This document shows, one piece after another, positions 20,737-55,145 of a stretch of 64,000 nt of DNA. The stretch is from Vitrella brassicaformis CCMP3155 (Eukaryota; Protista; Chromerida), in the NCBI GenBank assembly GCA_001179505.1, contig CDMY01000268.1, positions 1 to 64,000 on the forward strand. The letters are read 5' to 3'. Position numbers and translations under genes: made by a program. How positions within the stretch are numbered: position 1 is the first letter of the stretch; every line of letters starts with the position of its first letter. A model generated the notes under the pieces. That model saw only the letters and a list, made by a program, of their open reading frames with translations, was not told the DNA's origin and did no database searches.

Positions 20737-23700
20737 ATGGAAGAGCACCAGGAAGAGCAGGAGGCTCCTCTCCTACCGGGTCAGCAGACAAGGAAAGATG
20801 CCTTTCGTCGTGTCCATCGTGCGGCGTTTGCAGGTGCTGAGGCAGCCCATCTTCTGACACTGCAGGAGCATGCTACGGTCGTCGCTCAGTCGCTGCACGC
20901 AGATGGGCAAATCGATGGACATGATCCGCCACAGGTGAGCATGCCAAATGAAGGAATGAATGCCTCAAGATGATCTGATCATCCTTCTGTTGCCCTTCTG
21001 TTGCTTCTGCGTCAGCCATCGGTCCATCATTTTTCACTTCAGCCAGCCGACGAATGGCCCTTTAGCCATCCACCGGCTCTCCCTCTATCTCCCCCATTTC
21101 TCCCCCCTGCCGAGCATCCCCACCTCTCATCGAACATGACGCCCCGTTCTTACGCCCTGGTCCCATTCTTCTCGTCGGACGAGCAGCAGCCGAGCGGTGC
21201 GAGTGAAGCACTGTGTGACTTTGACCATGTGACTGACGGCACTGCCCAGATGGTGACCACACAGACAAGCAGCGATGCTACTGCACAGAGGGATGCTACA
21301 AATAGACTGCCTCACCGATTGTCTGTGCTCTCTTCTTTTTGGTGCAGCAAGCAGCAGCGGACCAGCAGGGTGCACCTGCACAAGAGGCTCCTCCATCTGG
21401 TCAGCAGACAAGAATGCACGCACCCAGACATGCTGTTTCATCGCGTCCATCGTGCTGTCGTTTGCAGGTGGTCAGCCTCTGGCCTACAGCTGGAGCGAGG
21501 ACAATTCAGTGCAGCGAGCCGCTCCAGCCATCAGCGACTCGCTGCACCCAGATGGGCGCACCGATGGGCTTGGTCTACCACAGGTAAGCAGAGAAGATAA
21601 CGCGTGCATCCATTGATTTCATCCCTTTGTCGCGTGCCTGTCTGTTTCGTTCAGCCATCGGGCCATCATTTATCACCACCAGTGGAGGCTCACCCATCAG
21701 CAGTCCAATGGCCCTTCGGTCATCCCGCCGCTCTTCCCCCTTTCATCCCACACAACCACCTCGAACCATTCCCTCCTGCCGGCTACCAAGATCCCTCACT
21801 TCCCATGCCCCTCCCAGCTCACTCCTCTGACTCTCACTTCCAGCTCCCTCTCATTGACCCACTCATGGCTGGCGCACCTGGCGGTCTACCGCTCTCCACA
21901 GAGGGATCGCTGAGGCAGCGAGCGTCATCCCTCCCACCCCCACGGACACACAAGGCGGCGCCTGAAGTGACGCTCGCCGAGAGAGAGGCGCTGCTGGCCG
22001 ACTTCGAGAGGCGCAAGGAGCAGGGAGAGGAGCTGACCATGAGGGCATTTGCAGTCGAGAAGGGAATCACTCTCAGCCAGTTCAAGCACTGGTACTATCG
22101 GTCAAAAGGGGGGGCACATCATGAGGCGGCGGACAAGACAAAGAAGCGCACCAGGAAGTCGCCCTATCAGCCGATCGAAGACGAGATACGCCAATGGCTG
22201 GTTGGCCATGATGATCCGACTAGCATCTCCGTGGAGCACATGCGCCGCACGGCACTGGAGATTGCGCAGCGGCTGGGCATCAGTGGCTTCAAGGCGAGCG
22301 ATAGGTGGATCAGTGATGTGAAGAAAAGATACAAGCAGGTGGGACAGAGGGCACACAAGCGGGGGACGAGTGGACGATGGATTGCACGTCTGTCGCCTTT
22401 GCCTGTCGTCCAGACTGTTGCTTCCACCGATCAGACTTCCCCCGCTGCTGCTGCTGATGCTGCTGCCGCAAGTGCCGTCCCACCTCCCTCGATCTACACC
22501 AACGGCATGACGGGCGACCAAGACTGCGACGCGTTCCCGCAAGAAGGAACGCACAGACTGCGCGGAGCTGACGCATCGAAGTACACGCAAGGGGCATTGA
22601 ACCAGACCGATCAGGTGACAAGCAATCGACACATCACGCCCATCTTCTTATGTTCTAGCCACATCTTTTGTGCTGTTGGCAGAGCCGCGAAGGAGGGCAA
22701 TTTGTGTCGGCTGCCGCCGCGGCGTCTTCTCATCCCCCTCATTCCCTTCCCTCTACACTTACCCACCGGCCGGAGCTGCACATGCCAGCTGCAGCAGCTG
22801 CCGCGGCTCTCCCTGCACCTACCTACTCATCGGCAGGTGGACACATGGATGCTGCAGCGGCCGCGGCAGCGGCTCTCGCTTTCCAGATGCATCCACCCCA
22901 CACACCTTCCCTACCTATTCCCGTCCCTCACCAGTCACCACAGAGGGAGCTTTCCGACGTGAAGGGACTGAGCAGACCGGTTCGCAACACGCGCCCGTAT
23001 GGTGCTTCAGCGACATGTGTTTCTCTTCTCGCAGAGCACTGAGTCTGTTGCAGCCCCGCCATCAAGCCGCGAGGGACTGAGCGATCAGCAGGTACGACAT
23101 CAGACGATGCACCCAGCCCGTGAATGTATGTCGTGCGCTGTGTTGCAGGGCCAAGTGGCTGACGAGTCAGCTGCGGTGCGAATGGCGGATGGCTTCATCG
23201 GCCGTCGTCATAACGATTGGGTGACTCATCGGCGGTTGAGCGTGCAGAACCCACCGGCTGCTGACGGCGATCGAAGGCTGCACCAGCAATCGCAGTACTC
23301 GAGACAAGAGGCTCATGTGCCTGCCGCAGCTGCTGTCGCCAGTACCCATCCCCATTTTCCAGTGCAGCCGCCCCACTCCCATCCCTTACCCAGGCCCCTC
23401 ACCCACCCGTTGGAAGCAGCTCCGGCTGCCGCTGCTGCAAGTCGGGAGGCGGATGGGTTCATCGGACCGACGACCGACCTCAGCCGACAGGTAACACACT
23501 AATCCTGACACCACGGCGACAACTGAGGCCTTTTGTCTGCCTGTCTGTCTGTCTGTCTTGACTTGGCTGGCTTCAGACCACCACCTGCCCACCAGACGAC
23601 GATGCTGCTGTCAGCGATCGGCCGCTCGACGAGCAATCGCAGCATTCGGGGCAAAAAACCATGAGCGTAAGCCAACCAACAGGGCTCACTAATCTGTTCA

Positions 23701-25603
23701 ACAAAGCAGCATATTTCGGCTGTCTGTGTTGTCGTTCAGATTTTTCAGTCTGGGAGTCGACTGACCAACGAGAGGCCGCCAAACAAGATCCAAAAGGCTC
23801 CCACACGCAGCCACCGAGAGGGCCCGCCGTCTGTGGTGAGTGAAACGCCATGAAATAAACATCCACACAGACGGGGAGGCATCGTGCTGTTGTGTGTGCA
23901 GGTGCTGTCCCGTTCATCGGCCAAGTCTGTGTTGACAATGACTGCCGACGATCGCCTCAGTGACATACCAGAGGTCAGACACACACAAGGAGGCCAATTG
24001 AGAGCATTAGGACGCGTCTGGCTCTCTATGCTGTGCGATTAGGATGACGATGGTGACGCGATTAACGTGTCTGACGATGCGAGTAGTTATGTCACGGCCC
24101 TCTCAAGTCGCAGCACGACTGACGGGGACGACCGATCGCCCGACCGCCAGGTGAGAATGCCCATGGGGTGATTGCAGCATCACCACGATTGTCCTCACCT
24201 CCCTCTCTGTGTGTGCAGGTGGTCACTGGCAGCAGTCTGACTTCGACTGAGTGTGCGGCCCTCCGCCCCGTTTTGGCGCTCGGCATGTTGGACGAATGTG
24301 AATTGACTCTGCTGTACAGGTGCGACGCACAAACCACATCACAGACACTGCAGTCAATCATGTGCCCTTCGCTGTTGTCTCTGATGTTCTCAGGGCGTCG
24401 CGTGACGGCGCAGAGTATGGCGATTTGCTGCGCTGTGTGGGCGACGCGCAGCAGCTGGTGTTCGTCATCCGCAAGGACAAGTACGTCTTCGGCGCCTTCA
24501 TCAGTGCCAACATCCTAGTGCCCGATCACCCAAGAGGCATGAACCGCTACCTTTGTGATGGGTGGGATTTCTCGCTGGCCGGCCACTTCCCCAGACCGAC
24601 CAAGGTCGGGGAAGGCCTGGCCGGGCAGATGTGGGGGGACCGGCTGCCAGTGGGTGGGGCGAAGCTGTGGATCGGTGCGATCGGTGGGTGGCTGGAGTTG
24701 GGCTGTGAGGGTGGCGTTGCTGCTGATATGCGCAGCTGCCGTCATATCATCAGCAGCCATCGTGTGCTTGAGGGCTATGTGGGGGTGAGGGATGAGTATG
24801 GCCGTGCTCTGTTTGGGGGCAGTGAGGAGTTTATGGCCGATGAAGTGGAGGTCATTCGTGTCGACGGTCGGTCACTGCTCTCACTCAAGGTCACACACAC
24901 GTCAGCGAGAGAGAGCCGCATCGACGCCCTGTTGATTTGATTGCAGGTGATCGAGGGTGCGAATTTTGATCCGCTCCACTCTGCCGCACTCTATCGGTTC
25001 CTCGGACTGACAACTGGAAACACACTGAAGCTCATCTACAGGTGTCATAAATCGTCCATCGTTTGACTCTCTCTCTCTCGTCTTCCTTCTCTTTTCAGGG
25101 CTTCCCGTGACGGGCCATTATACGCCGATCTGCTGCGGTGTGTTGGCGATGCGAATAGCCTGGTGTTCGTTGTCAGCAAGGACAAGTACGTCTTCGGCGT
25201 CTTCATCAGTGAGGTCATCCGGCTGCCCGACTACAACGACTACGGCTGCGATGTGTGGCACTTCTCGCTGGCCGGCCACTTCCACAAGCCCACCAAGATA
25301 GAGGAGGGGAAAGGTAGAGTGTGGGTGGCAGGGCGGGGGGGGACACTTTTTCGGGCGAAGCTGGTGATCAGTGGGAATGGGTGGCTGGAGTTGGGCTCTG
25401 AGGATGGCTCTGCTGCTGACATGCGCAGCTGCCGTCAGTGGATCCACAGCTGGGATGTGCCTCAGGGCTATGTGGGGGTGAGGGATGAGGGTGGCCGTGC
25501 TCTGTTTGGGGGCAGCAGGGAGTTGTCATGGCTGATGAAGTGGAAGTGCTCACTGTGGTTTGAGAGGGAGAGAGAGGTCAGATTGACTGAGGACTGCATA
25601 TGA
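20737..25603 (+). CDS. CENP-B/pogo-type double HTH + low-complexity linker + two TLDc domains (copy 1, long N-terminus; frameshift in last ~12 codons)
   Basis: EREALLADFERRKEQGEELTMRAFAVEKGITLSQFKHW..RKSPYQPIEDEIRQW..RRTALEIAQRLGISGFKASDRWISDVKKRY at ~21980-22338. Phase-consistent exons lead to TLDc exons at 24393-24888 and 25098-25603. Confidence 0.75.
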
Positions 25604-31087: not shown

Positions 31088-31126
<39 letters not shown>

Positions 31127-31576: not shown

Positions 31577-31613
<37 letters not shown>

Positions 31614-34662: not shown

Positions 34663-37589
34663 TCACACCACAAAGACATCTACTTCATCGGCCATGAAAT
34701 CCCTGCTGCCCCCAAACAGAGCGTTGCCCTTACGTCTCACCCCAACATAGCCCTCAGGCACATCTTTCCTGTGGATGGACTGACGGCAGCGGCGCATGTC
34801 AGTACGAGCGCCACCCTCACAGCCCAACCACAGCCACCAGCCGACCCTCACCTTCGCCCCGCCCACTGTCCCCTCCCGCCCGGCCACACGCACTGGCAGC
34901 CAGCCCTCCCCCATTTTGGTAGGTCCCTTGGCGAAGTGGCCGGCGAGCGAGAAATACCAGACATCACACCAGTAGTACTTCTTCTTGTAGCCTGTTGGGT
35001 CGTCGGGCACTTGGATGTTGGCACTGATGAAGGCGCCGAAGACGTACTTGTCCTTGCGGATGAGGAACACCAGGTTCTTCGTGTCGCCCACACACCGCAG
35101 CAGATCGCCATACGACGGCCCATCATGCGAGGCCCTGAAAATAGGAGAAAGACGGGAGAGAGAGAGAGTCAAACGATGGACGATGTAGGACACCTGTAGA
35201 TGAGCTTCAGGCTGTTTTCACTTGTCGCTCCGAGGAACCGATAGAGTGCCGCCGACTGGAGCGGAGCGAAAGCTGCACCCTCGACCACCTGCAATCAAAT
35301 CAACAGAACACTGATGAGGCTCTCCCTCGCTGATGTGTGAGTGACCTTAAGTGAGAGCAGTGACCGGCCATCAAGACGAATGACTTCCACCTCGTCGGCC
35401 GTGAAGTACTCACCGCCCCCAAACACAGCCCGGCCACGCTTACTCCTCAGCCCCACATAGCCCTCAGGCACATCAAGGCTCCAGATGGAATGACCGCAGC
35501 TGCGCATATCATCAGCAGCGCCACACCCCAACCACAGGCACCCACCGAACCCACCGATCCCCAGCTTCGCCCCATCCACTGTCCCCCCCCGCCCCGCCAC
35601 CCACACGCACTGCCTGCATTCCCACAACTTGGTCGGTCCCTTGGCGAAGTGGCCGGCCAGCGAGAAATGCCACATATCACACTCGTACCCGTCGACGCCC
35701 GTTGGCTTAGCGGGCGGCTGGATGCCGGCGCTGATGTAGACGCCGAAGACATAGATGTCCTTCCGGATGATGAACAACAGGCCGGTATTGTCGCCGACAC
35801 AATGGAGGAGATCGGCATACGACGACCCATCACGTGAGGCCCTGAGAATACGACAAACACATGCTTGATCGATTGCACGGGCTTTCTGTGATGTGTGTCG
35901 TACCTGTACAGCAGAGTAAATCCCAACTCGTCAAACACGGATGGGACAAGCCAGGAGTGGAGGCCCGCACACTCAGCCTCACTCAAACTGCTGCCAACGA
36001 TCATCTGCACGTAAACGCAGACGCTAGTCTTGAAGATTGCATGCATTCTTGTTTCTTATCTGGACGCAATCATGCCATGTGCAGACTCTCACTTGCGGGT
36101 CATGCAGTTTGTCATCCTCGTCTGTTGTGCTGCGAATTGAAACGGCCATGACATGACCAACCGCACCATCAGACACACTTATCATATCATCACCATCCTG
36201 ATGGCACAGCACAGATGTGCAATAAGTGATGTGCTGCCGTCTTTGTCTGTGTCTGTCTGACCTCTGCTATGTCACTCAGGCTATCGTCGGCAGTCATTGT
36301 GAACACAGACTTGGCCGATGAACGGGACCACACCTGCACACACAAACTCACAATGCCTGACCGTCTGTGTGGGTGTCCATTTCACTGCCTTTTGCTGACC
36401 ACAGACGGCGGGCCCTCTCGGTGGCTGCGTGTGGGGGTCCTTTGGATTTTGTTTGGCGGCCTCTCGTTGGTCAGTCGACTCTCTGACGGCGCCATCTGAA
36501 CGACAACACATACAGCTCAAATAAGTTGCTGCTGCTGCTTTCGCCAACGTGTGAATGAGTCCTCTTGGTTTGGTTACGCTCATGGTGTTTTGCCCCGAGT
36601 GCTGCGACTGCTGGTCGAGCGGCCGATTGCGGGCAGCAGCAGCATCGTCGTCTAGTGGGCAGGTGGGGGTCTGCAGCCAGACAAGTCAAGACACGAAGGT
36701 GTTACTTGCTGCTGTGGTGTCAGCCCGCTGAGTGTCTTACCTGTCGGCTGAGGTCGGTCATCGGTCCGATGAAGCCATCTGCCACCTGGATGTCAGCAGC
36801 AGCAGCAGCAGCATCAGCTGAAGCTGCTTCCGACTGGTGAGTGAGGGGCCTGGGTAAGGGATGGGGATGCGGCGGACGCATTGGGAAAGGGGGATCGACA
36901 GCAGCAGCAGCTGCTGCAGCGGCAGGTGGCTCAGAGGACGGCAAAGGAATCTGAAAAAGGAGGCATAGACTGATGAAAAGTGGATCTCTCACTGCATTTG
37001 TTATCTTTGCCTGACCTGTTGGCATCGCTTCCTGAAGGTTTTGATCCACTTGTCGCTCGCCGAGAAGCCAGTGACGCCCAGCCGAATGGCGATCTCCATC
37101 GCCTTGGCTCTGATGGCCTTGGGGGGGACGCTCGTGGGGTCGTCATGGGTAGCCATCCACTGCCGCATGTCGTCCTCGATCTGCTGGTACTTGGGCGGCC
37201 TGTTGCGCTTCTTGTCTGAGTCGACGATTTGCTTGCCCTCCTCCCTCTGTTTTTTGGTGGCATAACACCACTGCCTGAAGCGCTTGGGTGGAATGCCTTT
37301 CTCCTTGGCGAACTGGGACATGTTGATGGACTCGCCGGATTGCTGTCGTCGAATGAACTCGTCCACCAGCTGCAGCCGCTCGCCGATTGCCACCTCGCCC
37401 GCCCTCTCTGTCGACATCTGGACAACCGTGAACAGCAGACATGTGAAGACATGTGAGTGAGCGCAGTTTCACCTGTTGTGAGGATCCTCCTGTCGTTCCT
37501 TTTGTTGATGTGGGCCGTGGTGGGAGCGACTCCGAGCGATCGTAATGGGAAGCAGCCGATGCACCCCCGCTTACCACCGGCTGACCCAT
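34663..37589 (-). CDS. CENP-B/pogo-type HTH-TLDc-TLDc (copy 2, apparently intact)
   Basis: ERLQLVDEFIRRQQSGESINMSQFAKEKGIP..RNRPPKYQQIEDDMRQW..IRAKAMEIAIRLGVTGFSASDKWIKTFRKR, phase-consistent exons, and two LLYR|ASxDG TLDc exons ending FMADEVDVFVV*. Confidence 0.85.
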
Positions 37590-39288
37590 AACCACCAGGC
37601 CATGATTCAAAAAGGGCCACTCAGCGTCATCTAATCGACAATCGGATCCTCGTCTGTGCGGTTCTCAGTGTGTCGTGTCGGTCCACTCACTGTGATGCGA
37701 GTCTGTCGTCAATCCACCACCGAGATCATTCGATTCCCATTCTGTCTGTGGCTGCACTGCGCACACAGACACACAGACACACAGCCAGGGAGGGTCAACA
37801 GACGTCAAACAGATGGCCGTGCAGCGACTGTGTTTGCGCACCTGATGATGAGCGTTTTCGTGATTCACCGTGACTGCAGCGGCGGCAGCCACCTGTGGGG
37901 AAAGGCCACCACGTGACATTGCTTGCCGGGTGTGCTCACCCCACTGACGCACGTACCTGTGTTTGACTGTAATGACGCTCATGATGCTCCTCGGCCGATG
38001 CGGTGGCCCACATCCAATCACCCTCAAGATCACCCTGCACACACATGAGAAGCAGACGAAAAATGAGCCAAAGCAGTGACGTGTTGCGGCACAGCACATT
38101 ACCTGTGCGTCAGATCTGCCCAAATCACTCATCAGAATGCCCTCTTTTCGCCGGACGATGAGTTTTTTCACTCTCTCTTTCAGATCGCTGCAGCTCGCAA
38201 AAAGCGGAAGGAAGGGGGGGAAGAGGGGTGCTGGACGATCTGGTGTGGCTGTTGTGTTGTCTGTAGGTCACCTCCTCCGAGCGACAGTGGAGATCTGGCT
38301 GTGGTGATCTGGCTGCTTCTCCTGGCAATCTTGTGACGTCACGTTTTGAGACCACCACCCGGAGGGCACACACGATGGGTCAAACACGTGGTGCCTTCGT
38401 CTTTCTCAGTTTCGTCGGCAGATGAGCGTACACGATCGTGCCGAATTAGAGGACTCATCGATACTCTCGCCTCCGCTACCCATGGGTCCGGGCTCGCTCG
38501 TCGAGCCCGGACATCCCGTCGCTGCTGATCCTGCCTGTCCTGCCTGTCCTGATCTGAGCCTGCCTGTACCGAGTCAAATGGGAGAGAGCCATCCGCCCTC
38601 ACGAGCCCGACAGCGCGACGTGCGCGCGGGGGAGACCGGTGGGCGGGTGTGTCACGAAGGACACGGGTGGGTGCGCGAAAAAGCGTCGCCCGTCGAACAG
38701 CGTCCGCGACGTGACTGTCGCGAGTCGCGACCGAAAACCGGCCAAGAAACATCGAGCTCGCAAGCGCGCCCGTGTGTCTGTGAGCGCGTCGCTGCGGCTG
38801 CGAGTACGTACGCCACCGCACGCAGGCGTGCTCAGGCTGCCATACTCTCGCCTCCGCTACCCATGGGTCCGGGCTCGCTCGTCGAGCCCGGACATCCCGT
38901 CGCTGCTGATCCTGCCTGTCCTGCCTGTCCTGATCTGAGCCTGCCTGTACCGAGTCAAATGGGAGAGAGCCATCCGGCCTCACGAGCCCGACAGCGCGAC
39001 GTGCGCGCTCCCAAATGCCAACAGTAAACCGGTACAGGGCAGGCGAAGGCTGCATCACGGTGACGAAGCGAGGGAGGAGAGCTGAGTCACCGTATGCCTC
39101 AGAATCATCCTCTGTCCGTCTGTCTGTCTGTCTGTCTGTCTTTCCGTCTATGTCTTCGATGTCTCGTGCTGCCGGCGCTTTGCTTGGCGCTTTATCGTTA
39201 CTGGTTCACCGGACCCGATCAGGCCGCCCCAGAGACATCACGTGATGGCCATGGCACGGGCGCCTGCGTGTGAACGGAGTAGTTTCTT

Positions 39289-41907: not shown

Positions 41908-42689
41908 AACACTGTCGGCTTGCTGCTGCTGTTGCTTCCTTGACCCAGGCGTGCTAAGCCTGTGACTGGTGTGTTTTCCTGACTCTTCGCAGACTACCGT
42001 GATGTGTCGGTAAGGGTAATTCGCTCTGCCTGGCTCTCTCTCGCCAACCCGATTTCGAAATTGAACTCTCCGGTAACCCTCGATCTATTCGGCTGAATAC
42101 TCTGTTTCCTTCTCTTGCTCCCCGCCGGGCTCCGCGTCGGTTTATTCTTCGTTTGGATCGGGCGCAGCCCTCTCTCGGCTTCCTCTGTGGTTGACTGTCT
42201 AACAGGCAAGGTCCTACGAGACCACCACGCCGTCGCGAAAAGGATTTTTATCACACCATTCTGCGATCGCTCGTCAGACATCTGCAGTTCGCGGTTTGCT
42301 ACGGAGCCACGGATGCTGCTCGTTTGGGGGCCTCGTTATGTAAGTTACTCGTCGCAATCCTAAATCGCTGGCGCCTTTCTTGTGAGGCCTTGTTCGTGGG
42401 GCGAGAATCTTCTTCGTGGGGCGAGAATCTTGTTTGGGACGATAACATGTGACCTCCGCTTGTGTCGAGGTGTATTGCCTCTCTGACCCATGCATACTCG
42501 AGATACGGCGCTCTACGTGACACGCAGTCATCGATTGCAGACGCTTCGAGGAGCCCTAGACGAAAACTTCATCGTCACTAAAACGAATCGTCCAAGGGGT
42601 GCGACGATAAGCTGACACTCTGATAGAGGCCTAGCCATACGCCAACGAACGCCCGCAGCGGCTGCGACTCGCGATGGGAGGACGAGGGA

Positions 42690-45600
42690 GGCCCGCTTGC
42701 GGCCACGAGTCGATAGAGACAGAGGCCTCACGCCAACGAAACGGTCGCTGCTCCGAATCGACGAAGACAAGCGATGAGAAGCTGACGAAGACCCGATCGC
42801 GGCCACGACTCGATAGAGACGCAGAGCTACAAGCCAACGACGGCCCGCAGCTATAATCGACGAAGAGAAGCGATGAGAGGCTAACGAAGGCCCGATCGCG
42901 GCCACGACTCGATAGAAACACAGAGCCACGAGCCAGCGACGGCCCGCAGCTATAATCGACGAAGAGAAGCGATGAGAGGCTAACGAAGTCCCGATCGCGG
43001 CCACGACTCGATAGAGACACGGAACCACGAGCCAGCGACGGCCCGCAGCTATAATCGAAGAAGAAAAGCGATGNNNNNNNNNNNNNNNNNNNNNNNNNNN
43101 NNNNNNNNNNNNNNNNNNNNNNNNNNNNNNNNNNNNNNNNNNNNNNNNNNNNNNNNNNNNNNNNNNNNNNNNNNNNNNNNNNNNNNNNNNNNNNNNNNNN
43201 NNNNNNNNNNNNNNNNNNNNNNNNNNNNNNNNNNNNNNNNNNNNNNNNNNNNNNNNNNNNNNNNNNNNNNNNNNNNNNNNNNNNNNNNNNNNNNNNNNNN
43301 NNNNNNNNNNNNNNNNNNNNNNNNNNNNNNNNNNNNNNNNNNNNNNNNNNNNNNNNNNNNNNNNNNNNNNNNNACTCATTTTTGCCGATGCGTTGCACTG
43401 CTGACCGCTTGGCGGTTTGAGTGTCGTCTGGCGTACGAGTCGCCGCTCGGCGGCTTCCGTGTCGTGTCGTGTGGATAGCTGGTTGCTCGGCCGCTCGGCG
43501 GCTTTCTTTCGTGTCGTGCGGATAGATGGCCGCTCGGCGGCCCGGATGTTGTTTGGCGTTGCGAGTCGTTGAATAGTATGTGTTGCGGCTTGGTTTAATT
43601 TAGCTGCTAGCGAGTCCCACACGGGGGGCCGACATCATGACGCCAACCGAGTCCTGCTGTGACTCGGTGGCTGTTACTGTCTGTCAGTTGTCGTTCTCCT
43701 CGTCCTTGGGTAGAGACGACTCGCTGTCGTCCTGGCTCCAGTAGCAGGGGCGTTGAAGTCGATGGATCCAGCAGCAGGGGCGTTGAAGTCGATGGATCCC
43801 GCAGCACACTCGCAGCAGCAGGGGGGTCGAAGTCGATGGATCCAGCAGCAGGGGCGTCGAAGTCAATGGATCCAGCAGCAGGGGGGTCGAAGTCGATGGA
43901 TCCAGCCGCAGGGGCTTTGAAGCCGTGGGTCCAGCAGCACACTCGCAGCAGCAGGGGGGTCGACGTCGATGGATCCGGCAGCAGGAGCGTCGAAGTCGAT
44001 GGATCCAGCAACAGGGGCGTCGATGGAGCCAGCAGCAGGGGCGTCGAAGTCGATGGATCCAGCAGCAGGGGCGTTGAAGTCGATGGACCGGCTCCCTGGC
44101 CGACGGAAGATCTCCCTGAGAAACTCGCATCGGGGAGGAGGACGAACCGCACCACCCTGCGCAAGCCTCGAGCAGCATTTGCACCACCCAGAGGGGCCGC
44201 CCCTGTTGCGAGGAGGTACACACCGGGGGGGGGCACCGCGGGGTTAGAGGATGGGAGCGGGGATGCTTGGGGGATGCACCACTATGGGCGGATCTCGCCT
44301 CGTGGTACCGACAAGTGCGCGAAAAAGCGTCGCCCGTCGAACAGCGTCCGCGACGTGACTGTCGCGAGTCGCGACCGAAAACCGGCCAAGAAACATCGAG
44401 CTCGCAAGCGCGCCCGTGTGTCTGTGAGCGCGTCGCTGCGGCTGCGAGTACGTACGCCACCGCACGCAGGCGTGCNNNNNNNNNNNNNNNNNNNNNNNNN
44501 NNNNNNNNNNNNNNNNNNNNNNNNNNNNNNNNNNNNNNNNNNNNNNNNNNNNNNNNNNNNNNNNNNNNNNNNNNNNNNNNNNNNNNNNNNNNNNNNNNNN
44601 NNNNNNNNNNNNNNNNNNNNNNNNNNNNNNNNNNNNNNNNNNNNNNNNNNNNNNNNNNNNNNNNNNNNNNNNNNNNNNNNNNNNNNNNNNNNNNNNNNNN
44701 NNNNNNNNNNNNNNNNNNNNNNNNNNNNNNNNNNNNNNNNNNNNNNNNNNNNNNNNNNNNNNNNNNNNNNNNNNNCCCGATCGCGGCCACGACTCGATAG
44801 AGACACGGAACCACGAGCCAGCGACGGCCCGCAGCTATAATCGAAGAAGAAAAGCGATGAGAGGCTGACGAAGGCCCGATCGCGGCCACGACTCGATAGA
44901 GACACGAAACCACGAGCCAGCGGCGGCCCGCAGCTATAATCGAAGAAGAAAAGCGATGAGAGGCTAACGAAGTCCCGCTTGCGGCCACGACTCGATAGAG
45001 ACACGGAACCACGAGCCAGCGGCGGCCCGCAGCTATAATCGAAGAAGAAAAGCGATGAGAGGCTAACGAAGTCCCGATCGCGGCCACGACTCGATAGAGA
45101 CACGGAACCACGAGCCAGCGACGGCCCGCAGCTATAATCGAAGAAGAGAGGCGATGAGAGGCTGACGAAGGCCCGATCGCGGCCACGACTCGATAGAGAC
45201 ACGGAACCACGAGCCAGCGACGGCCCGCAGCTATAATCGACGAAGAGAAGCGATGAGAGGCTAACGAAGGCCCGATCACGGCTACGACTCGATAGAGACA
45301 CGGAACCACGAGCCAGCGACGGCCCGCAGCTATAATCGACGAAGAGAAGCGATGAGAGGCTAACGAAGGCCCGATCGCGGCCACGATTCGATAGAGACAC
45401 GGAACCACGAGCCAGCGACGGCCCGCAGCTAGAATCGACGAAGAAAAGCGATGAGAGGCTGACGAAGGCCCGATTGCGGCCACGACTCGATAGAGACACG
45501 GAACCACGAGCCAGCGACGGCCCGCAGCTTGAATCGACGAAGACCTACGGTGAGAGACTGACAACGGCCCGTTCGCGGCCACGACTTGATGGAGACACGA

Positions 45601-45790
45601 CGAAGCCACAAGCCAGCGACGGTCCGCAGCCATAATCGACGAAGACAAACGATGGAAGGCTGAGAAAGGCCCGCTCGCGGCCACGACTCGATGGACACGA
45701 AGCCACAAGCCAGTGACGGCCCACAGCTACAATCGACGAAGACAAGCGATGAGAGGCTGACGAAAAGCCCGTTCGCGGTCACGACTCGGC
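42690..45790. repeat. 99-bp tandem arrays (~4 copies at 42690-43073, ~10 copies at 44776-45790)
   Basis: Unit CCCGATCGCGGCCACGACTCGATAGAGACACGGAACCACGAGCC..GACGAAGG starts at 44776 and 44875. It translates on the minus strand as a 33-aa repeat. Confidence 0.9.
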
Positions 45791-46680
45791 AGGGCACGCA
45801 ACTATTAGTCTGCGCACTTTGATCGACTTGTATTTGTCATAGATCGTCAGCTTGTTACACTGCCGCCATCGACTATGCACTCCTTCTATTAGTCTATCTA
45901 CCCGTTGCTTATCCGTTGTCGCCCGAGTGGCAGACAAGGAATGGCGCGGATTCAACTTCCTTGCGCTCGTGCGCGGCGGGATTTAGTGCGAAGACAAGTG
46001 ACTGTTAAACGTCTGGCTAGTGACGAGACGTCGCTCTGCTTCCTGAAGCGGGAAGAGAGAGGAGGGTCGGTGGAGAGAGAGAGGGAGAGAGAGAGGGAGA
46101 GAGAGAGGGAGAGACTAGTGAGAGTGAGAGAGAGAGATTCAGGTACGAGCGTACAAACTTATCGATCCCTCGAAATCGTTGTGCTGTCNNNNNNNNNNNN
46201 NNNNNNNNNNNNNNNNNNNNNNNNNNNNNNNNNNNNNNNNNNNNNNNNNNNNNNNNNNNNNNNNNNNNNNNNNNNNNNNNNNNNNNNNNNNNNNNNNNNN
46301 NNNNNNNNNNNNNNNNNNNNNNNNNNNNNNNNNNNNNNNNNNNNNNNNNNNNNNNNNNNNNNNNNNNNNNNNNNNNNNNNNNNNNNNNNNNNNNNNNNNN
46401 NNNNNNNNNNNNNNNNNNNNNNNNNNNNNNNNNNNNNNNNNNNNNNNNNNNNNNNNNNNNNNNNNNNNNNNNNNNNNNNNNNNNNNNNCAGCAGCAGGGG
46501 GGTCGAAGTCGATGGATCCAGCCGCAGGGGCTTTGAAGTCGTGGGTCCAGCAGCACACTCGCAGCAGCAGGGGGGTCGAAGTCGATGGATCCGGCAGCAG
46601 GGGCGTCGAAGTCGATGGATCCAGCAACAGGGGCGTCGAAGTCGATGGATCCAGCAGCAGGGGCGTTGAAGTCGATGGAC
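43740..46680. repeat. 30-bp tandem arrays (CAGCAGCAGGGGCGTCGAAGTCGATGGATC) at 43740-44090 and 46490-46680
   Basis: Repeated unit giving STSTPLLLDP on the minus strand. Each array is followed by the same ~230-bp segment and repeat B. Confidence 0.85.
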
Positions 46681-47349
46681 CGGCTCCCTGGCCGACGGAA
46701 GATCTCCCTGAGAAACTCGCATCGGGGAGGAGGACGAACCGCACCACCCTGCGCAAGCCTCGAGCAGCATTTGCACCACCCAGAGGGGCCGCCCCTGTTG
46801 CGAGGAGGTACACACCGGGGGGGGGCACCGCGGGGTTAGAGGATGGGAGCGGGGATGCTTGGGGGATGCACCACTATGGGCGGATCTCGCCTCGTGGTAC
46901 CGACAAGTGCGCGAAAAAGCGTCGCCCGTCGAACAGCGTCCGCGACGTGACTGTCGCGAGTCGCGACCGAAAACCGGCCAAGAAACATCGAGCTCGCAAG
47001 CGCGCCCGTGTGTCTGTGAGCGCGTCGCTGCGGCTGCGAGTACGTACGCCACCGCACGCAGGCGTGCTCAGGCTGCCATAATGAGGTTCAGTGATTCCGG
47101 AGCTATGCAGGATTACTCCCGCAGCGTGCTGCTGTCTGGCTGTTGTCGGCATAGTCGCAATGAATGGTGAGTTGTCCGTTTTTGCTTTCGCAGCAAGGGC
47201 GTCTGAGATTCAGGCTTCTGCCACCTTGTGCTTGCTCTGCAGGTGGTGTTCCTCTGTCACGGCCACACTTCCTGCATAGAGTTCACGAGCAATGGCGTTT
47301 CATCAAGCTCGATCGCCATCGGTCTCAGTCGCTGGCCGACCCCATCAAC

Positions 47350-49767: not shown

Positions 49768-51132
49768 ATGGACGAGCTCATTCCCTTTGTAATGGACATC
49801 GTTCCGGTCGCTGCACTCTACGCTGGAGTGGCGGCCGTGATCTTCGGCAGCTGGCCACGCAAGAATCGGACGACGCCCAAGGACTTTCAGAAGCCGCTCA
49901 GCCTGTCTGAGGCGCTGACCGACTTCGGCGAGGCGGCCAGGTACGCACACACAGGAGAAAATCTTCCATCACCTCCAGTGTTCGCTCTCCCATAGGGATC
50001 TCGACGGGGCCCTGGATTCCGTGTCGGACATCCTGACGCGGCTGCAGACCATCTTGGCACCTGGTGAGACCTTCAAACTACTGGTCGTGGGGATAACTGG
50101 ATAAGCGGCAAAGAGGAATGCACGACCGACGCCAAGAACACACAATCGTGCATGTCTCTTCGCGTCTCGCAGCCATGGCAAGACCTCGTTCCTCAATTCC
50201 CTCCGTTCAATCATGCGGTGCTTGGTGGACGACAAAACGAACGGCACGAGCGAGAGATACAACGGCAAATTCACGCAGGTATGGAAGGAAATTGGTATTT
50301 TCTTCATGTGATTGGTGTCATTTCTTGTCGACATCCTCGACTCTCCCTTCTCAGTTTGAAGCCCAAGGCAAGACGCGCAGCACCCACATCACCAAGCATT
50401 TCATGACCAAGTGGGCGGCACCTAACAACCATGACATCCCTCTCCAGTTCCAGGACACGCCTGGCATCGCCGTCCCTCACGAGATCACCGACATCATTAA
50501 AGCCGTCGAGGTGGGCACACACTGGGGGGGCTCACGCAGAGTCATCTTTCCCCCCGTGAGCATACAGGGTCGTCTCCCAGAGGACGGCTCTAACGTGGTC
50601 AAGCCAAATGCACCGCTGGTGGTGCTCAGCTGTGAAGTGGATACTGCCTCAGAGGAGTGCAACAACATCAAAGCCATCATCCGACACGGAATGGACGTCC
50701 AGAAAGGTAATCATCCACCCATACGAACATACAAGAGACTGTACATTTGTGTCTGCTGGCAGGTGGTGTGTATGTGGTGTGCACGAAGGCCGACAAGCTG
50801 CCCTTCGTCACCAGGCAGGGACTCACGACACGCAAACAGCGACTCGAGTTCTTCCAGTCCCCCAAATTTGAGAGGGAGATCGACATCCGCCGCGCGAAAG
50901 TGGCCGAAGACCTCGGGTGCGGACACACACATTGACACACACACACACCCCCCTACATCAAAACGCCAGGCCTGCTGTCTGTTATCTGTGTGTCCTTAGT
51001 GTTGACATGAGCCACGTGTATTGCGTGGTCAACTATGGCGAGGATGGCTATCTCAATCCGGTCATGAGCCTGCGACTTGTCCACGTTTTGAAGAGCATCG
51101 TCACCGACTGCTACCTTCGCTTCGAGCAGTAG
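49768..51132 (+). CDS. IFI44/IFI44L-like P-loop GTPase with N-terminal TM segment; one intron has a non-canonical AT donor
   Basis: GCCACCATGG start; TM VPVAALYAGVAAVIFG; G1 LLVVGITG/HGKTSFLNSLRSI; G3 DTPG; G4 TKAD; C-terminus VAEDLGVDMSHVYCVVNYGEDGYLNPVMSLRLVHVLKSIV..EQ*. Confidence 0.7.
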
Positions 51133-51854
51133 GTAAGAACGCAACTGCCAGACTCTCCAGCGTCTGTCCTTTTCCGTTTGCAGGACCAAGTATCATGTGT
51201 GCCAACGCCGCTGCTGTATGTCGTGACGTGACGTGTCGTGACGTGACGTGTTCCATGGCTGTGCGATTCTGTCTCGCCGCTGCGCTTGCGCAGACTTGCT
51301 GGTGTATCGGCACTTGCGGGTGTGGCATGCTTGCGCATGAGCGTTAAGCAGTTCGTATGATTTCAATCGTGTTGTCTCTGCTTGTCGGGACGGTGGGATA
51401 CATGGAGGGTACACAGAAGTACGTGCACACTCAGCCGATTTTTATGCCTTCTGTTTGTCTGATTTCATAAAGATCACACTCTTTGCGCTGCATCCAGAAA
51501 CACAACGTTTGTGTTAGTTTGATATTCTCAACGTGGCTGTGGCATCATATTAAAAATCAAAGTACGAAATCACGATGCAATTAATGTGTCCAAATCGTCA
51601 GCAGCAAAGTCCCTGCTGCCTCGTTCAATGAATCTGACCCCTCCCGCCCACTATCCTTCTGTCTGTCTGTCTGTCTGTCTATCACACAGCATCTGCCTGT
51701 CTGCTGTGTATGCGGACAGACCACATCGCACCAATCCAGCGAACACAACGAACACAGAGGGCCGAGAACAGAGAGGCCTCACAAATCTGAATAAAAGCAA
51801 TACGCATACAGCACAGCCATCAGAGACTTCCTCAAGTGATCTCGGGCCTCACAC

Positions 51855-54800
51855 TCACACCACCTCGAGCACCTCCACCTCATCTGCCATAAACTGACGA
51901 CTGCCCCCAAACATAGCAGAGCCATGCTCATCCCTCACCCCCACATAGCCATCAGGCACATACTCGCTGAGGATCCGCTGACGGCAGATGCGCATGTCAG
52001 CAGCAGCGCCACCCTCACAGCCCAACCACAGCCACCCAGTCCCACTGATCCACAGCTTCGCCCCATACATTGTCACCTCCCGCCCAGCCACCCCCACCAT
52101 CCGGCTGCCTTTTTTCATCATCTTCGGTGTGTCGAAGTGGCCGGCCAGAGAAAAATCACACCCATCACACTGGTAGACGTTCAGTGGTTTTGGGTCGTCG
52201 GGCAGTCGGATGCCACCACTGATGAAGGCGCCGAAGACGTACTCGCCCAATACATACATGTCCCGTCTGAATACATACATGTCCCGTCTGACGATGAACA
52301 CCAGGCCCTTCGTGTCACCCACACACCGCAGGAGATCATCATATGACGCCCCGTCACGCGAGGCCCTAAGAATAGAAGACAGACAGAGTCAAAGGATCGA
52401 CCTGTTCTAAGGTCAGGTGTACCTGTAGATCAGCTTCAGTTCATGGGTTCCCATTGCCGGCCCCAGAAACCGATAGAGTGCCGAAGATTGAAAGGGATCA
52501 AAAGTTGTGCCCTCGATCACCTGCAATATAACAACAACATCGCCGTCTGATTCGATCTCTCTTTGATGTGTGTATGACCTTGAGTGACAGCAGGCCGTCG
52601 ACACGAATGACTTCCATCTCATCAGCCATAAACTCCTCACTGCCCCCAAACAGAGCACGGCCAGCCTCATTCCTCACCCCCACATAGCCCTCAGGCACTT
52701 CCCAGCTCCACATGAAGCGACGGCAGCTGCGAATATCAGCAGCAGCAGCAGCGCCACCTCCATAGCCCAACCAACGGCCCAGCCAACCGAACCAGCCATC
52801 CCCATGGCCCCATCCCAACCAGTCGCATGGCCCGATCCTCACCCTTGCCCCTCGCACTGTAGCTCTGTCCCGCCCGGCCACACAAACTGGCCATTTGCCT
52901 TCCCACGTGATGGTGGGCTTTTCAAAGTGGCCGGCCAGCGAGAATTGCCACCCATCACAGTCGTACTCGTTTCTGCCTCTAGGGTCGTCGGGCAGCCGGA
53001 TGCCGGCACTGATCCAGGAGCCGAAGACGTACTTGTCCTTGCGGATGATGAACGCCAGGCCACTCGCATCGCCCACACACTGAAGCAGATCACCATAGGT
53101 TGCGCCATCGACAGAGGCCCTTAGGATACCAGAAAGACGACAGAGAATGACACATGATTGATTGCAGGCCCTGTGTGTGGTTTGTTTGTACCTGTACAGC
53201 AGAGTGAATTTACATTCGTCCAACATGGACGGCACGAAGAGGGAGCGGAGGGCCGTACGTTCAGACGAAGTCAGTCTGCTGCCAACGATCATCTGCACGC
53301 AGACAGACGCACGTGTTGGTGACTGCATTTTTGTTTCTGATCTGGACGCAATCATGCCATGTGCAGACTCTCACTTGCGGGTCATGCAGTTTGTCATCCT
53401 CGTGTGTTGTGCTGCGAATTGAAACGGCCATCACATGGCCAGCCGCACCGTCAGACACACTCAGCCTATCATTATCGTCCTGATGACAGTACAGCGAAGA
53501 TGTACAACAAGTGAGTTTCAGTCCTCTTTGTCTGCGTCAGTCTCACCTCTGGTATGTCACTGAGGCGATCGTCGGCAGTGACGGTGAAGACAGACTTGGC
53601 CGATGAACGGGACCACACCTGCATGCACACAAACTCACAATGCCTGACCGCCTGCCTGCCTCTCCGTGTCTGTGGGTGTCCACTTGATTGCGCTTCACTG
53701 ACCACAGACGGCGGCCCCTCTCTGTGGCTGCGTGTGGGGGTCCTGTGGATCTTGTTTGGAGGCCTCTCGTTGCTCAGTCGGCTCTCTCACGGCGTCAGCC
53801 AGCTGAAGAGCAACAGGAGTAGATGTATAGCAGAAACTTATTCCGCAACACATGAATGAGCCCTCTTGCTTTACTTACGCTCATGGTGTTGCGCTCTGAT
53901 GGCTGCGACTGTGTGTCGAGCGGCCGATCGCTGGCAGCAGCATCGTCGTCTGGTGGACATGTCGTAGCCTGCAATGACGACGGCAGACACATAAAGGCCT
54001 CATTTGCTGCCGTGGTGTGCGCAAGCTAGGTGTATCACTTGTCGGCTGAGGTCGGTGGTCGGTCCGATGAAGCCATCCGCCATTCGCACCGCAGCTGCCT
54101 CATCAACCTTTTGGCCCTGCAAGGCACCACAGGAGAAACATGCATGGGCTGGGTGCATTGTCTGACGTCGTATACCTGCTGATCGCTGACGCTGTCGCCT
54201 CTTGGTGGCGGTGCAGGGACAGACTCGGTGCTCTGGGAGAAGAGAAACACATGTCGCTGAAGGGGCATGTGGCTGTGCAGTGCGCACCTGCCTGGTCCAT
54301 CCGGTCTTGTCAGGGAGCTCCTCTTGTGGCGGCTGGCAGGTGAGGGGCATGGGTAGAGGGTGGGGGTGGGGCAAATGCATCGGCAGCGAAGAGATGGACG
54401 CTGAGCGAGCTACGGACGAAAAGCAGCCGTTTGTTGAGAAGAGGAGTGCTGATGAAGGGCATGGGCCAGGCAGAGGGGCTACTAAAGCTGCGGCGGCGGC
54501 AGGTGGGTCAGAGGACGGCAAAGGGATCTGGAGTAGGCATGGATCGACAAACGTGGATGATACTTTGTCCATCCTACTTGTAAGCATCGTTTTCTGAATG
54601 ACTTGATCCACTTGTCGCTCGCAGAAAAGTCCCCGACGCCCAGCCGACTGGCAATCTCGATTGCCTTGGCTCTGATGGCCCTTGGGGGGACGCTTGTGGG
54701 GTCGTCATGGGTGGCCATCCACTGCCGCATCTCGTCCTCAATCTGCCGGTACTTGGGCTGCCTGTTGCGCTTCTTGTCCGAGTCGGTGACCGGCATCCCG

Positions 54801-55145
54801 GCCTCCCTCTGCTTCTTGATGTCACTGCACCACTGTCTGAAGCGCTTGGGTGGAATGCCTTGCTCCTCCGCAAACTGGGACATGTTGATGGACTCGCCGG
54901 ATTGCTGCCGGCGAATGAACTCGTCGACCAGCTGCAGCCGCTCGCTGATGGCCACCTCGCCCGCCCTCTCTGTCGACATCTGGACAACCGTGGACAACAG
55001 ACATGTGAAGGCATGTGAGTGACCGGATTTTCACCTGTTGTGAGGATTGTCGGGTCGTGCTTCTTGATGTGGGCTGTGGCGGGAGCGACTCAGCTCGATC
55101 GTGGTGGGCAGCTGATGCACCCGCGGTGATCACCGGCTGACCCAT
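51855..55145 (-). CDS. CENP-B/pogo-type HTH-TLDc-TLDc (copy 3)
   Basis: ERLQLVDEF..RNRQPKYRQIEDEMRQW..GDFSASDKWIKSFRKR; same exon chain as copy 2; TLDc exons at ~53121-52580 and 52366-51855 with an in-frame RRDMYV duplication. Confidence 0.85.

What the first reader, a model, noticed from the sequence alone, without database searches (positions are those of the whole stretch)
20737..55145. Family of CENP-B/pogo HTH-TLDc-TLDc fusion genes (three copies)
Seen: three genes (20737-25603 +, 34663-37589 -, 51855-55145 -) join a bipartite HTH (R..PKY..IED..RQW..IR.KA.EIA.RLG...F.ASD.WI..F.KR) through a Pro/His/Ala-rich linker to two TLDc domains. No DDE catalytic domain or terminal inverted repeats are visible. 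Established: this HTH (HTH_Tnp_Tc5) derives from pogo/Tigger transposases, and TLDc domains bind V-ATPase and are linked to oxidative-stress resistance. I do not know of this fusion. Inference: a domesticated transposase DNA-binding module coupled to TLDc sensors, i.e. a candidate stress- or V-ATPase-responsive transcription regulator.
Basis: partly seen in the sequence, partly recalled or inferred. Interest (0 to 1): 0.75.

Follow-up and report, generated by a model that had tools for sequence, protein, structure and literature searches.

The report
DNA-binding head fused to twin TLDc domains
Three neighbouring genes of the coral-associated alga Vitrella brassicaformis join a DNA-binding head borrowed from jumping genes to two copies of a TLDc domain; they are real members of a roughly 20-gene family seen so far only in this lineage, and their function is untested.

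Summary
The window is Vitrella brassicaformis CCMP3155 contig C268. All three loci match public gene models: CEL98330.1 (1139 aa), a 798-aa model (P0120) and CEL98338.1 (665 aa). Each has 9-17 exons with GT-AG introns. Each encodes a CENP-B/pogo-type bipartite HTH (PF03221 above cut-off; sequence and fold match to CENP-B 1HLV), a disordered but conserved linker, and two divergent TLDc domains (PF07534; fold matches OXR2, NCOA7, mEAK7). There is no DDE domain and no terminal inverted repeats. The assembly gaps lie between genes 2 and 3, not inside any gene.

The genes belong to a family: at least 31 HTH modules in the genome, 20 of them followed by TLDc exons, against one DDE_1 match genome-wide. 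A spliced transcript joins HTH and TLDc exons in one paralog. No transcript was found for the three window genes. The HTH is more constrained (dN/dS 0.19-0.48) than the TLDc exons (0.5-0.8).

The architecture is auto-annotated in UniProt, but I found no paper describing it. This scan noted the same family earlier on other DNA (s1-242836, s1-199310). The proposed role as a V-ATPase- or stress-responsive regulator is untested. Verdict: a new variant of known kinds, of moderate interest.

The parts
20737..25603 (+). Gene 1, public model CEL98330.1 (P0022, 1139 aa), 17 exons
   Evidence: Exact exon-by-exon mapping of P0022 with GT-AG introns. Organism and accession.
21955..22338 (+). Gene 1 bipartite CENP-B-type HTH (inside exon 21655-22338). 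The splice donor follows ...KKRYKQ.
   Evidence: PF03221 at 26.1 bits against a cut-off of 22.2. 47% identical to the gene 2 module.
24222..24892 (+). Gene 1 TLDc domain 1 (exons 24222-24320 and 24395-24892, split after LLYR)
   Evidence: PF07534 at 25.1 bits; family TLDc profile E=3.7e-78; exon mapping.
24950..25603 (+). Gene 1 TLDc domain 2 (exons 24950-25042 and 25100-25600). A 2-nt insertion near 25525-25535 replaces the conserved C-terminal FMADEVEV strand.
   Evidence: Three-way alignment. The shifted-out frame still reads MADEVEVLTVV followed by a stop. Protein alignments.
34663..38132 (-). Gene 2, public model P0120 (798 aa), 15 exons. The five short 5' exons upstream of 37408 are unverified.
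   Evidence: Exon mapping; same contig of 141,840 bases.
37016..37417 (-). Gene 2 HTH exon (an ATG at 37417 opens MSTERAGEV...)
   Evidence: PF03221 at 30.9 bits; 84% identical to the gene 3 module.
35343..36004 (-). Gene 2 TLDc domain 1 (exons 35903-36004 and 35343-35840)
   Evidence: Exon mapping; TLDc profile E=2.3e-77.
34666..35285 (-). Gene 2 TLDc domain 2 (exons 35193-35285 and 34666-35133)
   Evidence: PF07534 at 30.7 bits; TLDc profile E=1.9e-80.
51855..54979 (-). Gene 3, public model CEL98338.1 / A0A0G4ELN3 (P0001, 665 aa), 9 exons. The model skips two linker exons that remain open and conserved in the DNA.
   Evidence: Exon mapping; alignment; names.
54578..54979 (-). Gene 3 HTH exon
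   Evidence: PF03221 at 38.6 bits. Aligns to CENP-B 1HLV residues 20-129, E=1.2e-4. AF2 pLDDT above 90.
52573..53292 (-). Gene 3 TLDc domain 1, with a Gly/Trp-rich insertion of about 20 residues
   Evidence: AF2 model with pLDDT below 50 at residues 383-395; alignments; Foldseek hits to TLDc structures.
51858..52514 (-). Gene 3 TLDc domain 2, with a 12-codon tandem duplication (RRDMYVF/RRDMYVLGE) just before the conserved YVFG
   Evidence: Alignments; AF2.
36093..36950 (-). Gene 2 linker exons: PHPHPLP, ADGFIGP.TDLSRQ, TTCPPDDDAA, RESTDQREAAKQ, SRSSAKSV..TADD.LSDI.E and an acidic run. The homologous stretch of gene 3 is predicted disordered, yet the exons are conserved across paralogs.
   Evidence: Family consensus; AF2 pLDDT 29-39 in the homologous gene 3 stretch; the exons recur in paralogs and in transcript L003.

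Best explanation
The three loci are paralogous, intron-rich protein-coding genes of Vitrella brassicaformis. They belong to a family seen so far only in the Vitrella lineage.

Each protein has three parts:
- an N-terminal CENP-B/pogo-type bipartite helix-turn-helix DNA-binding head, with no transposase catalytic core;
- a disordered linker of about 100-400 residues, made of short conserved exons (Pro/His-rich and acidic motifs);
- two tandem, highly divergent TLDc domains.

Shown: the head is an exapted transposon module that multiplied by segmental duplication. It was shuffled onto several C-terminal partners, of which the linker-TLDc-TLDc cassette is the commonest.

Inferred: the head tethers the protein to specific DNA in the nucleus. 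The TLDc pair, a protein-protein interaction fold in all studied cases, recruits or senses a protein partner there. The proteins would then act as DNA-bound adaptors or transcription co-regulators. The partner is unknown, and V-ATPase is only one candidate.
For: Gene structure
- Public models map exon by exon with GT-AG introns.
- Splice positions are shared by all three loci.
- Exons are more conserved than introns: 73-79% against 62-67% identity. For genes 2 and 3, gap columns make up 7% of exons against 35% of introns.

Domains
- PF03221 and PF07534 score above their cut-offs.
- The AF2 model of P0001 has pLDDT above 90 over the HTH and both TLDc domains.
- The top 11 Foldseek hits are all TLDc structures (4acj, NCOA7, mEAK7; target TM about 0.7). 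CENP-B 1hlv is also hit at probability 1.0.
- phmmer aligns the head to CENP-B residues 20-129.

One mRNA
- A complete 711-aa HTH-TLDc ORF sits on two independent transcript assemblies (MMETSP/JGI, L001; Logan SRR646408, L002).
- Its DNA maps at 99-100% identity in about 20 exon pieces to C260:58155-63243.

Family
- 31 full-length HTH modules. 20 of them have TLDc exons within about 5 kb downstream on the same strand.
- All named members are Vitrella.

Not a transposon
- One DDE_1 match in 72.7 Mb, on another contig.
- No TIRs.

Selection
- HTH dN/dS is 0.19 for genes 2 and 3, and 0.48 across 11 paralogs.
- TLDc dN/dS is 0.5-0.8.

The head as a chromatin module
- One Vitrella model joins it to three AP2 DNA-binding domains.
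Against: - No transcript was found for any of the three window genes. Their clusters hold only the genome-derived model.
- Gene 1 has a frameshift that removes the last TLDc strand. Gene 3 has a tandem duplication and a large insertion inside its TLDc domains.
- TLDc dN/dS of 0.5-0.8 is weak constraint.
- DNA binding, nuclear location and any partner are inferred only.
- Some multi-domain models of the family could be merged annotations.
Confidence: 0.55

Rival explanations
1. The TLDc pair binds V-ATPase or senses oxidative stress as OXR1, NCOA7 and mEAK7 do, and the HTH converts that state into transcription. The protein would be a V-ATPase- or stress-responsive transcription regulator.
For: - The TLDc fold matches V-ATPase-bound NCOA7B, mEAK7, Oxr1p and Rtc5p structures.
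- The Gly of the RDG loop and the Gly of YVFG are invariant in all six window domains. These are my motif-level equivalents of NCOA7 G815 and G845, whose alanine mutants lose V-ATPase binding (PMC8608904).
- An acidic run lies upstream of TLDc 1. This recalls the poly-E motif of NCOA7 and TLDC2, which showed only a non-significant trend in that paper.
Against: - The domains are very divergent: 24-30 bits per exon, and neither the whole protein nor a profile of their main exons hits a solved TLDc chain by sequence.
- The NCOA7 S817-equivalent position varies (S/T/E/L).
- The genome has at least 156 such exons with many different heads. That number is hard to reconcile with one housekeeping partner.
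- Better-scoring TLD matches exist elsewhere in the genome and could serve the conserved V-ATPase role.
Confidence: 0.15
2. The genes are one arm of a diversified recognition repertoire. In Vitrella the TLDc pair would be a fast-evolving binding module placed behind many heads (BTB, LRR, signal peptide, HTH). The HTH-headed members would couple recognition of a variable ligand, such as a pathogen, symbiont or self marker, directly to DNA.
For: - Huge lineage-specific expansion: at least 156 matches among 407 candidates.
- An invariant scaffold is interleaved with hypervariable, indel-rich patches.
- The TLDc exons are less constrained than the HTH.
- The genes are clustered and mosaic: the gene 1 HTH has dS about 1.2 against genes 2 and 3, while its TLDc exons have dS of only 0.3-0.4.
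- Earlier notes of this scan report other TLDc heads and site-wise diversification. These are leads only.
- Structure-based Atlas neighbours include TLDc clusters with BTB, B-box or GTPase partners in other eukaryotes.
Against: My parsimony site counts on 21 TLDc exons found no site significant after any multiple-test correction (best raw p=0.019). Overall omega is below 1. No ligand is known and there are no expression data.
Confidence: 0.15
3. The three window copies are young duplicates drifting towards pseudogenes. The family may be functional, but these loci are not.
For: - Gene 1 frameshift at its 3' end.
- Gene 3 duplication and insertion in structural parts of TLDc.
- TLDc dN/dS up to 0.82.
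- No transcript evidence.
Against: - Apart from the frameshift in gene 1's last exon, which shifts its stop by only 37 bases, all reading frames stay open across 9-17 exons with intact GT-AG sites.
- Exons are clearly more conserved and far less gapped than introns.
- HTH dN/dS for genes 2 and 3 is 0.19.
- In gene 1 the old frame after the 2-nt insertion is still intact to the ancestral stop. The change is therefore very recent or an assembly error.
Confidence: 0.12
4. Annotation artefact: an HTH gene and a separate TLDc gene lie next to each other and were merged by the gene predictor.
For: The long linker is predicted disordered. The public models of the three loci differ in which linker exons they include.
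Against: - A de novo transcript carries the HTH and both TLDc domains in one uninterrupted ORF in a paralog.
- The same order and orientation recur at 20 loci.
- The linker exons are conserved and in phase.
Confidence: 0.03

Closest known systems
CENP-B and other pogo/Tigger-derived host proteins (S. pombe Abp1/Cbh1/Cbh2, JRK, TIGD, POGZ)
   Same: The same bipartite N-terminal HTH. It scores above the PF03221 cut-off and aligns to CENP-B residues 20-129 and to Abp1, with a fold match to 1hlv. It sits in an intron-bearing host gene with no TIRs.
   Different: Those proteins keep a DDE-derived central domain, and CENP-B has a dimerisation tail (my own knowledge). Here the core is absent and is replaced by a linker plus two TLDc domains. 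The nearest non-Vitrella-lineage relatives of the head are only 24-35% identical.
TLDc proteins OXR1, NCOA7, TBC1D24, mEAK7/TLDC1 and TLDC2 (yeast Oxr1p, Rtc5p)
   Same: The TLDc fold, PF07534, and the conserved LLYR-AS.DG and YVFG motifs.
   Different: - The domains are in tandem rather than single.
- They are extremely divergent and massively expanded.
- The N-terminal partner is a DNA-binding HTH rather than LysM/GRAM, TBC or a myristoylated EF-hand region.
- A 2026 review of TLDc proteins lists no DNA-binding member.
NCOA7 as a nuclear receptor coactivator, and the Drosophila TLDc protein mustard (my own knowledge, not tested here)
   Same: These are TLDc proteins reported to act in the nucleus on transcription. 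The HTH-TLDc proteins would be a version of this role tethered directly to DNA.
   Different: Those proteins have no DNA-binding domain of their own. No nuclear role has been shown for the Vitrella proteins.
Other Vitrella TLDc families noted by this scan (BTB-BTB-TLDc-TLDc, LRR-TLDc, signal-peptide-TLDc)
   Same: The same species-restricted tandem TLDc cassette, with the same clustered, mosaic mode of duplication (unchecked notes).
   Different: The head here is a DNA-binding HTH rather than a ubiquitin-adaptor, LRR or secretion signal. That implies a different cellular location.

Membership tests
CENP-B/pogo-type HTH DNA-binding domain | HTH_Tnp_Tc5 (PF03221) match above the gathering score | tested here: met
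   26.1, 30.9 and 38.6 bits against a cut-off of 22.2 for the three loci. Also found on the gene 3 model and on paralog models.
CENP-B/pogo-type HTH DNA-binding domain | Bipartite layout: a first psq/CENP-B_N-like three-helix HTH, then the Tc5 HTH | tested here: met
   phmmer aligns P0001 residues 25-131 to CENP-B residues 20-129. AF2 gives helices 11-26, 33-39, 44-59 and 78-88, 99-113, 122-147. Foldseek aligns 127 columns to 1hlv_A. Pfam CENP-B_N itself does not hit; there are only weak HTH_28 and HTH_Tnp_1 matches.
CENP-B/pogo-type HTH DNA-binding domain | Sequence-specific DNA binding | not testable with these tools
   Needs DAP-seq, EMSA or a protein-binding microarray.
pogo/Tigger DNA transposon | DDE_1 catalytic domain in the same ORF or element | tested here: not met
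   No DDE_1 hit in the ten family models scanned, gene 3's among them, or in the window ORFs scanned. The only DDE_1 match in the genome is at C458:4113-4610.
pogo/Tigger DNA transposon | Terminal inverted repeats flanking the unit | tested here: not met
   Only microsatellite-type inverted matches were found, and none flanks a gene.
Domesticated transposase-derived host gene | Host-gene features: conserved introns and purifying selection on the retained domain | tested here: met
   Shared GT-AG introns. HTH dN/dS of 0.19 for genes 2 and 3, and 0.48 over 11 paralogs.
Domesticated transposase-derived host gene | Phylogenetic nesting of the domain inside a transposase clade | tested here: inconclusive
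   Of 44 non-Vitrella relatives of the head, 38 carry PF03221 and only 6 carry DDE_1. Identity is 24-35%. No tree was built.
TLDc domain proteins | PF07534 match above the gathering score | tested here: met
   51.7 bits on P0001 and 50-70 bits on paralogs. Single exons score 25.1 and 30.7 bits against a cut-off of 24.5. The other TLDc exons fall below the cut-off when scanned alone.
TLDc domain proteins | TLDc fold | tested here: met
   AF2 pLDDT above 90 for both domains. Foldseek ranks 1-11 are all TLDc structures, E from 2.5e-6 to 7e-5, target TM 0.55-0.73 for the stand-alone domains.
TLDc domain proteins | Conserved residues needed for V-ATPase binding in NCOA7 (G815, S817, G845, G896, L926, E938; PMC8608904) | tested here: inconclusive
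   Motif-level mapping only. The G of AS.DG and the G of YVFG are invariant in all six domains, while the S817 position reads S/T/E/L. The C-terminal residues could not be mapped without a residue-level structural alignment. Gene 1's TLDc 2 lacks the final FMADEVEV strand.
TLDc domain proteins | Physical interaction with V-ATPase | not testable with these tools
   Needs a pull-down, AP-MS or complex modelling with Vitrella V1 subunits.

The most novel reading that the evidence does not exclude
Vitrella may have turned the TLDc pair into a diversified recognition module. It is present in hundreds of exons behind interchangeable heads. The HTH-headed branch, including these three genes, would then be a family of ligand- or partner-sensing transcription factors that wire recognition directly to DNA. 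That would be an innate-immunity-like or symbiosis-sensing system built from a fold so far known only as a V-ATPase partner.
Probability: 0.15. Interest if true: 0.8.

Novelty: new variant of a known kind. Interest (0 to 1): 0.5.

Why it matters
In every studied organism, TLDc domains are partners of the V-ATPase proton pump or stress factors, and they are not known to be joined to a DNA-binding domain. A family that tethers two of them to a CENP-B-type DNA-binding head would show one of two things. Either there is a direct route from TLDc signalling to chromatin, or the fold has been reused as a general binding module.

It is also a clear protist case of a transposase DNA-binding domain being exapted without its catalytic core and then shuffled onto many partners. 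Vitrella is the closest free-living relative of apicomplexan parasites, and one model joins the head to AP2 domains. The family may therefore add to the short list of DNA-binding protein families known in this lineage.

Tried and rejected
- **Active or relic transposon:** rejected. There is no DDE and no TIRs, the introns are shared, and the genome has one unrelated pogo-like DDE relic at C458.
- **Assembly-gap artefact:** rejected. All gaps lie outside the three genes.
- **Transcripts of the window genes:** none found. I tried exact look-ups of the three models and a peptide-pattern scan of metagenome and transcriptome contigs with gene 3's model.
- **The fusion outside Vitrella:**
  - The whole-library HMMER search with the head gave no TLDc-bearing hit outside the Vitrella lineage.
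  - The family-alignment scan of metagenomes found only distant TLDc loci with no HTH.
  - One environmental contig (L031) has a gene-1-like head and linker but ends before any TLDc.
- **Sequence link from the TLDc main exons to solved TLDc chains:** none by profile search. Only Pfam and the fold search connect them.
- **Site-wise positive selection in TLDc:** not significant with 21 sequences and parsimony counting.
- **Neighbouring ORFs:** Pfam gave nothing informative for them, including the ORF 50118-50999 noted elsewhere as IFI44-like and the gap-rich 38-47 kb stretch. The only hit was a PA domain at 13130-13996.
- **Literature:** no paper was found on TLDc in Vitrella, on HTH-TLDc, or on this family in the chromerid genome paper.
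- **Spliced models:** I sent no self-joined spliced model to any tool. Full-length work used the public model proteins returned by the searches. My own coding analyses were done exon by exon, by reference.

Full report
**What the window is.** The window is G000:C268:1-64000 of a 72.7-Mb genome in 1064 contigs. Proteins encoded here are held in NCBI and UniProt as Vitrella brassicaformis CCMP3155. Vitrella is an intron-bearing chromerid alga. Rfam finds no RNA family in the window.

**Checking the observation.**
- Pfam places HTH_Tnp_Tc5 above its gathering score in all three HTH ORFs. It places TLD above its score in one ORF each of genes 1 and 2.
- A whole-library HMMER search with the gene 3 head returned the public models: P0001 = CEL98338.1 (665 aa, gene 3) and P0022 = CEL98330.1 (1139 aa, gene 1).
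- The word search added P0120 (798 aa, gene 2).
- I mapped the three models back onto the window exon by exon. Gene 1 has 17 exons (20737-25603, +), gene 2 has 15 (34663-38132, -) and gene 3 has 9 (51855-54979, -). All introns are GT-AG.
- A three-way DNA alignment shows the same splice positions in all three loci: after the HTH (..KQ|GT), after ADGFIGP.TDLSRQ, inside each TLDc after LLYR, and so on.
- The N gaps named by the scan's program (39878-46488) lie between genes 2 and 3 and touch no exon. Continuity across them does not affect the finding.
- I handed no self-joined spliced sequence to any tool. Full-length analyses used the public model proteins, and my coding analyses were done exon by exon.

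**Domain identity.**
- On the full gene 3 model and on paralog models, Pfam gives PF03221 plus two TLD stretches.
- An AF2 model of P0001, built with a 33-member family alignment, has mean pLDDT 79.9. The HTH (residues 10-147) and both TLDc domains (250-465 and 470-665) are mostly above 90. The linker (147-242) is below 40.
- Foldseek ranks 1-11 against the PDB are all TLDc structures: zebrafish OXR2 4acj, NCOA7, V-ATPase-bound NCOA7B and mEAK7, and Skywalker. The stand-alone domains reach target TM 0.55-0.73. CENP-B bound to DNA (1hlv) ranks 12 at probability 1.0.
- By sequence, the head aligns to CENP-B residues 20-129, covering both HTH motifs (E=1.2e-4), and weakly to S. pombe Abp1.
- The TLDc domains are very divergent. 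A profile of the six main TLDc exons hits no solved TLDc chain by sequence.

**Not a transposon.**
- No DDE_1 appears in the ten family models scanned, gene 3's among them, or in any window ORF scanned.
- No TIRs flank any gene.
- The genome has a single DDE_1 match, at C458:4113-4610. That locus looks like one pogo-type HTH-HTH-DDE relic. The family search did not pick it up.
- The genome has at least 28 PF03221 matches.

**One gene or two?**
- A 711-aa ORF marked complete carries both families (P0014). It sits on an MMETSP/JGI transcript contig and, independently, on a Logan assembly of SRR646408.
- The Logan contig maps at 99-100% identity in about 20 exon pieces to C260:58155-63243. It joins the HTH exon (62550-63145) to the TLDc exons. 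The fusion is therefore a real spliced mRNA in at least one paralog.
- For the three window genes I found no transcript, and their 90% clusters hold only the genome model.
- Indirect support for coding function comes from exon-intron contrast. Exons are 73-79% identical between the loci against 62-67% for introns. For genes 2 and 3, gap columns make up 7% of exons against 35% of introns.

**The family.**
- The gene 2 head finds 45 matches in the genome, 31 of them full-length at E below 1e-30.
- Cross-tabulating by eye with the TLDc scans, 20 of the 31 have TLDc exons within about 5 kb downstream on the same strand. This is a lower bound, because only 150 of 407 TLDc candidates were scored.
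- Contig C268 alone holds six HTH-TLDc genes plus TLDc-only genes.
- Among the 50%-identity representatives of the head, 9 of 24 carry two TLDc domains.
- Other models join the head to an alpha-kinase, SH3, RING plus SH3, OHA/DUF7602, or three AP2 domains. Some of these may be merged annotations.
- All named members are Vitrella.
- One environmental contig (L031, GC 58%) carries a gene-1-like head at 48% identity. It has the same splice donor and the same PHPHPLP and ADGFIG linker motifs, but it ends before any TLDc.
- Outside this lineage the best relatives of the head drop to E about 1e-14 and 24-35% identity (bivalves, metagenomes). Six of 44 carry DDE_1 and none carries a detectable TLDc.
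- A family-alignment scan of metagenome contigs found only distant TLDc loci with no HTH.

**Evolution.**
- Nei-Gojobori dN/dS for the HTH exon is 0.19 between genes 2 and 3, and 0.38-0.44 against gene 1, where dS is about 1.2.
- For the TLDc main exons dN/dS is 0.50-0.82, with dS of only 0.31-0.53.
- Gene 1's head is thus far older than its TLDc exons relative to genes 2 and 3.
- A parsimony count on 11 heads and 21 TLDc exons gives omega 0.48 and 0.67. It shows an invariant TLDc scaffold (AS.DG, YVFG, FSLAGHF, DMRSC, EGYVGVR, FGGS, FMADEVEV) interleaved with hypervariable, indel-rich patches. No site is significant.

**State of the three copies.**
- Gene 2 looks canonical.
- Gene 1 has a 2-nt insertion near its 3' end that replaces the last conserved TLDc strand. 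The old frame still reads MADEVEVLTVV followed by a stop. The change is therefore very recent or an assembly error.
- Gene 3 has a 12-codon tandem duplication before YVFG in TLDc 2 and a Gly/Trp-rich insertion in TLDc 1.
- Gene 3's public model also skips two linker exons that remain open in the DNA.

**How it most likely works.**
- Shown: the architecture, the fold identities, the absence of a transposase core, the family structure, the fusion mRNA in a paralog, and stronger constraint on the head than on the TLDc pair.
- Inferred: the head binds DNA as CENP-B does, and the TLDc pair binds a protein partner. All studied TLDc domains are protein-interaction modules (PMC8608904 and the V-ATPase complexes). 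The proteins would then be DNA-tethered adaptors or co-regulators.
- The V-ATPase or stress version is possible. The Gly residues I map by motif to NCOA7 G815 and G845, which NCOA7 needs for binding, are invariant here.
- That version is weakened by the extreme divergence and by the sheer number of TLDc genes with other heads. The earlier notes report such heads, and I treat them as leads only.

**Novelty.**
- The models carry automatic names in UniProt ("HTH CENPB-type domain-containing protein", "Oxidation resistance protein 1"), so the architecture is publicly visible.
- I found no paper on it. There is nothing for TLDc with Vitrella, nothing relevant for "TLDc domain" with transposase, and nothing in the chromerid genome paper. 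A 2026 TLDc review lists no DNA-binding member.
- This scan had already flagged the same family on other contigs (s1-242836, s1-199310).
- I rate it a new variant of known kinds, of moderate interest.

Noticed in passing
window 9478-9942(-), 59819-60307(+), 62157-62642(+): Three further TLDc main exons of the same family lie outside the three genes, with no HTH nearby. The match at 62157-62642 contains a TGA. The window is part of a larger TLDc gene cluster that continues beyond 64 kb on the contig.
   Followed up: partly
window about 25525-25535 (+): Gene 1 has a 2-nt insertion relative to genes 2 and 3. It shifts the frame for the last 12 or so conserved residues, yet the old frame is still intact up to the ancestral stop. 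This is either a very recent frameshift or an assembly error.
   Followed up: partly
window 51858-52364(-) and 52573-53118(-): Gene 3 has a 12-codon tandem duplication just before the conserved YVFG of TLDc 2. It also has a Gly/Trp-rich insertion of about 20 residues in TLDc 1, modelled with pLDDT below 50.
   Followed up: partly
L022 (G000:C458) 4110-5684(-): This locus holds the only DDE_1 match in the genome. Upstream ORFs read like the two HTH motifs of a pogo-type transposase. It appears to be a single relic or domesticated copy, not close to the HTH-TLDc family.
   Followed up: partly
L031 (ENA ERZ893784, contig k147_3082792) 2667-4381: An environmental contig (GC 58%) carries a gene-1-like HTH at 48% identity. 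It has the same splice donor position and the same PHPHPLP and ADGFIG linker motifs, followed by a second half-HTH. This suggests a Vitrella-like organism in that sample.
   Followed up: partly
window 38300-47100: This stretch is broken by five N gaps. It has lower GC (42-51%) and strong, sign-changing AT skew. Its ORFs have no Pfam family above a cut-off. Another first-stage note reads it as a repeat element.
   Followed up: partly
window 50118-50999(+): This 293-aa ORF is noted elsewhere in the scan as an IFI44-like GTPase. It has no Pfam match at E of 0.01 or better in my scan.
   Followed up: partly
window 13130-13996(+): This ORF has a PA (protease-associated) domain (26.9 bits, cut-off 23.9). 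It is unrelated to the finding.
   Followed up: no
G000:C238:39217-40383(+): Two HTH modules lie in tandem in one 462-aa open frame, upstream of two TLDc exons. This is a double-headed member of the family.
   Followed up: no
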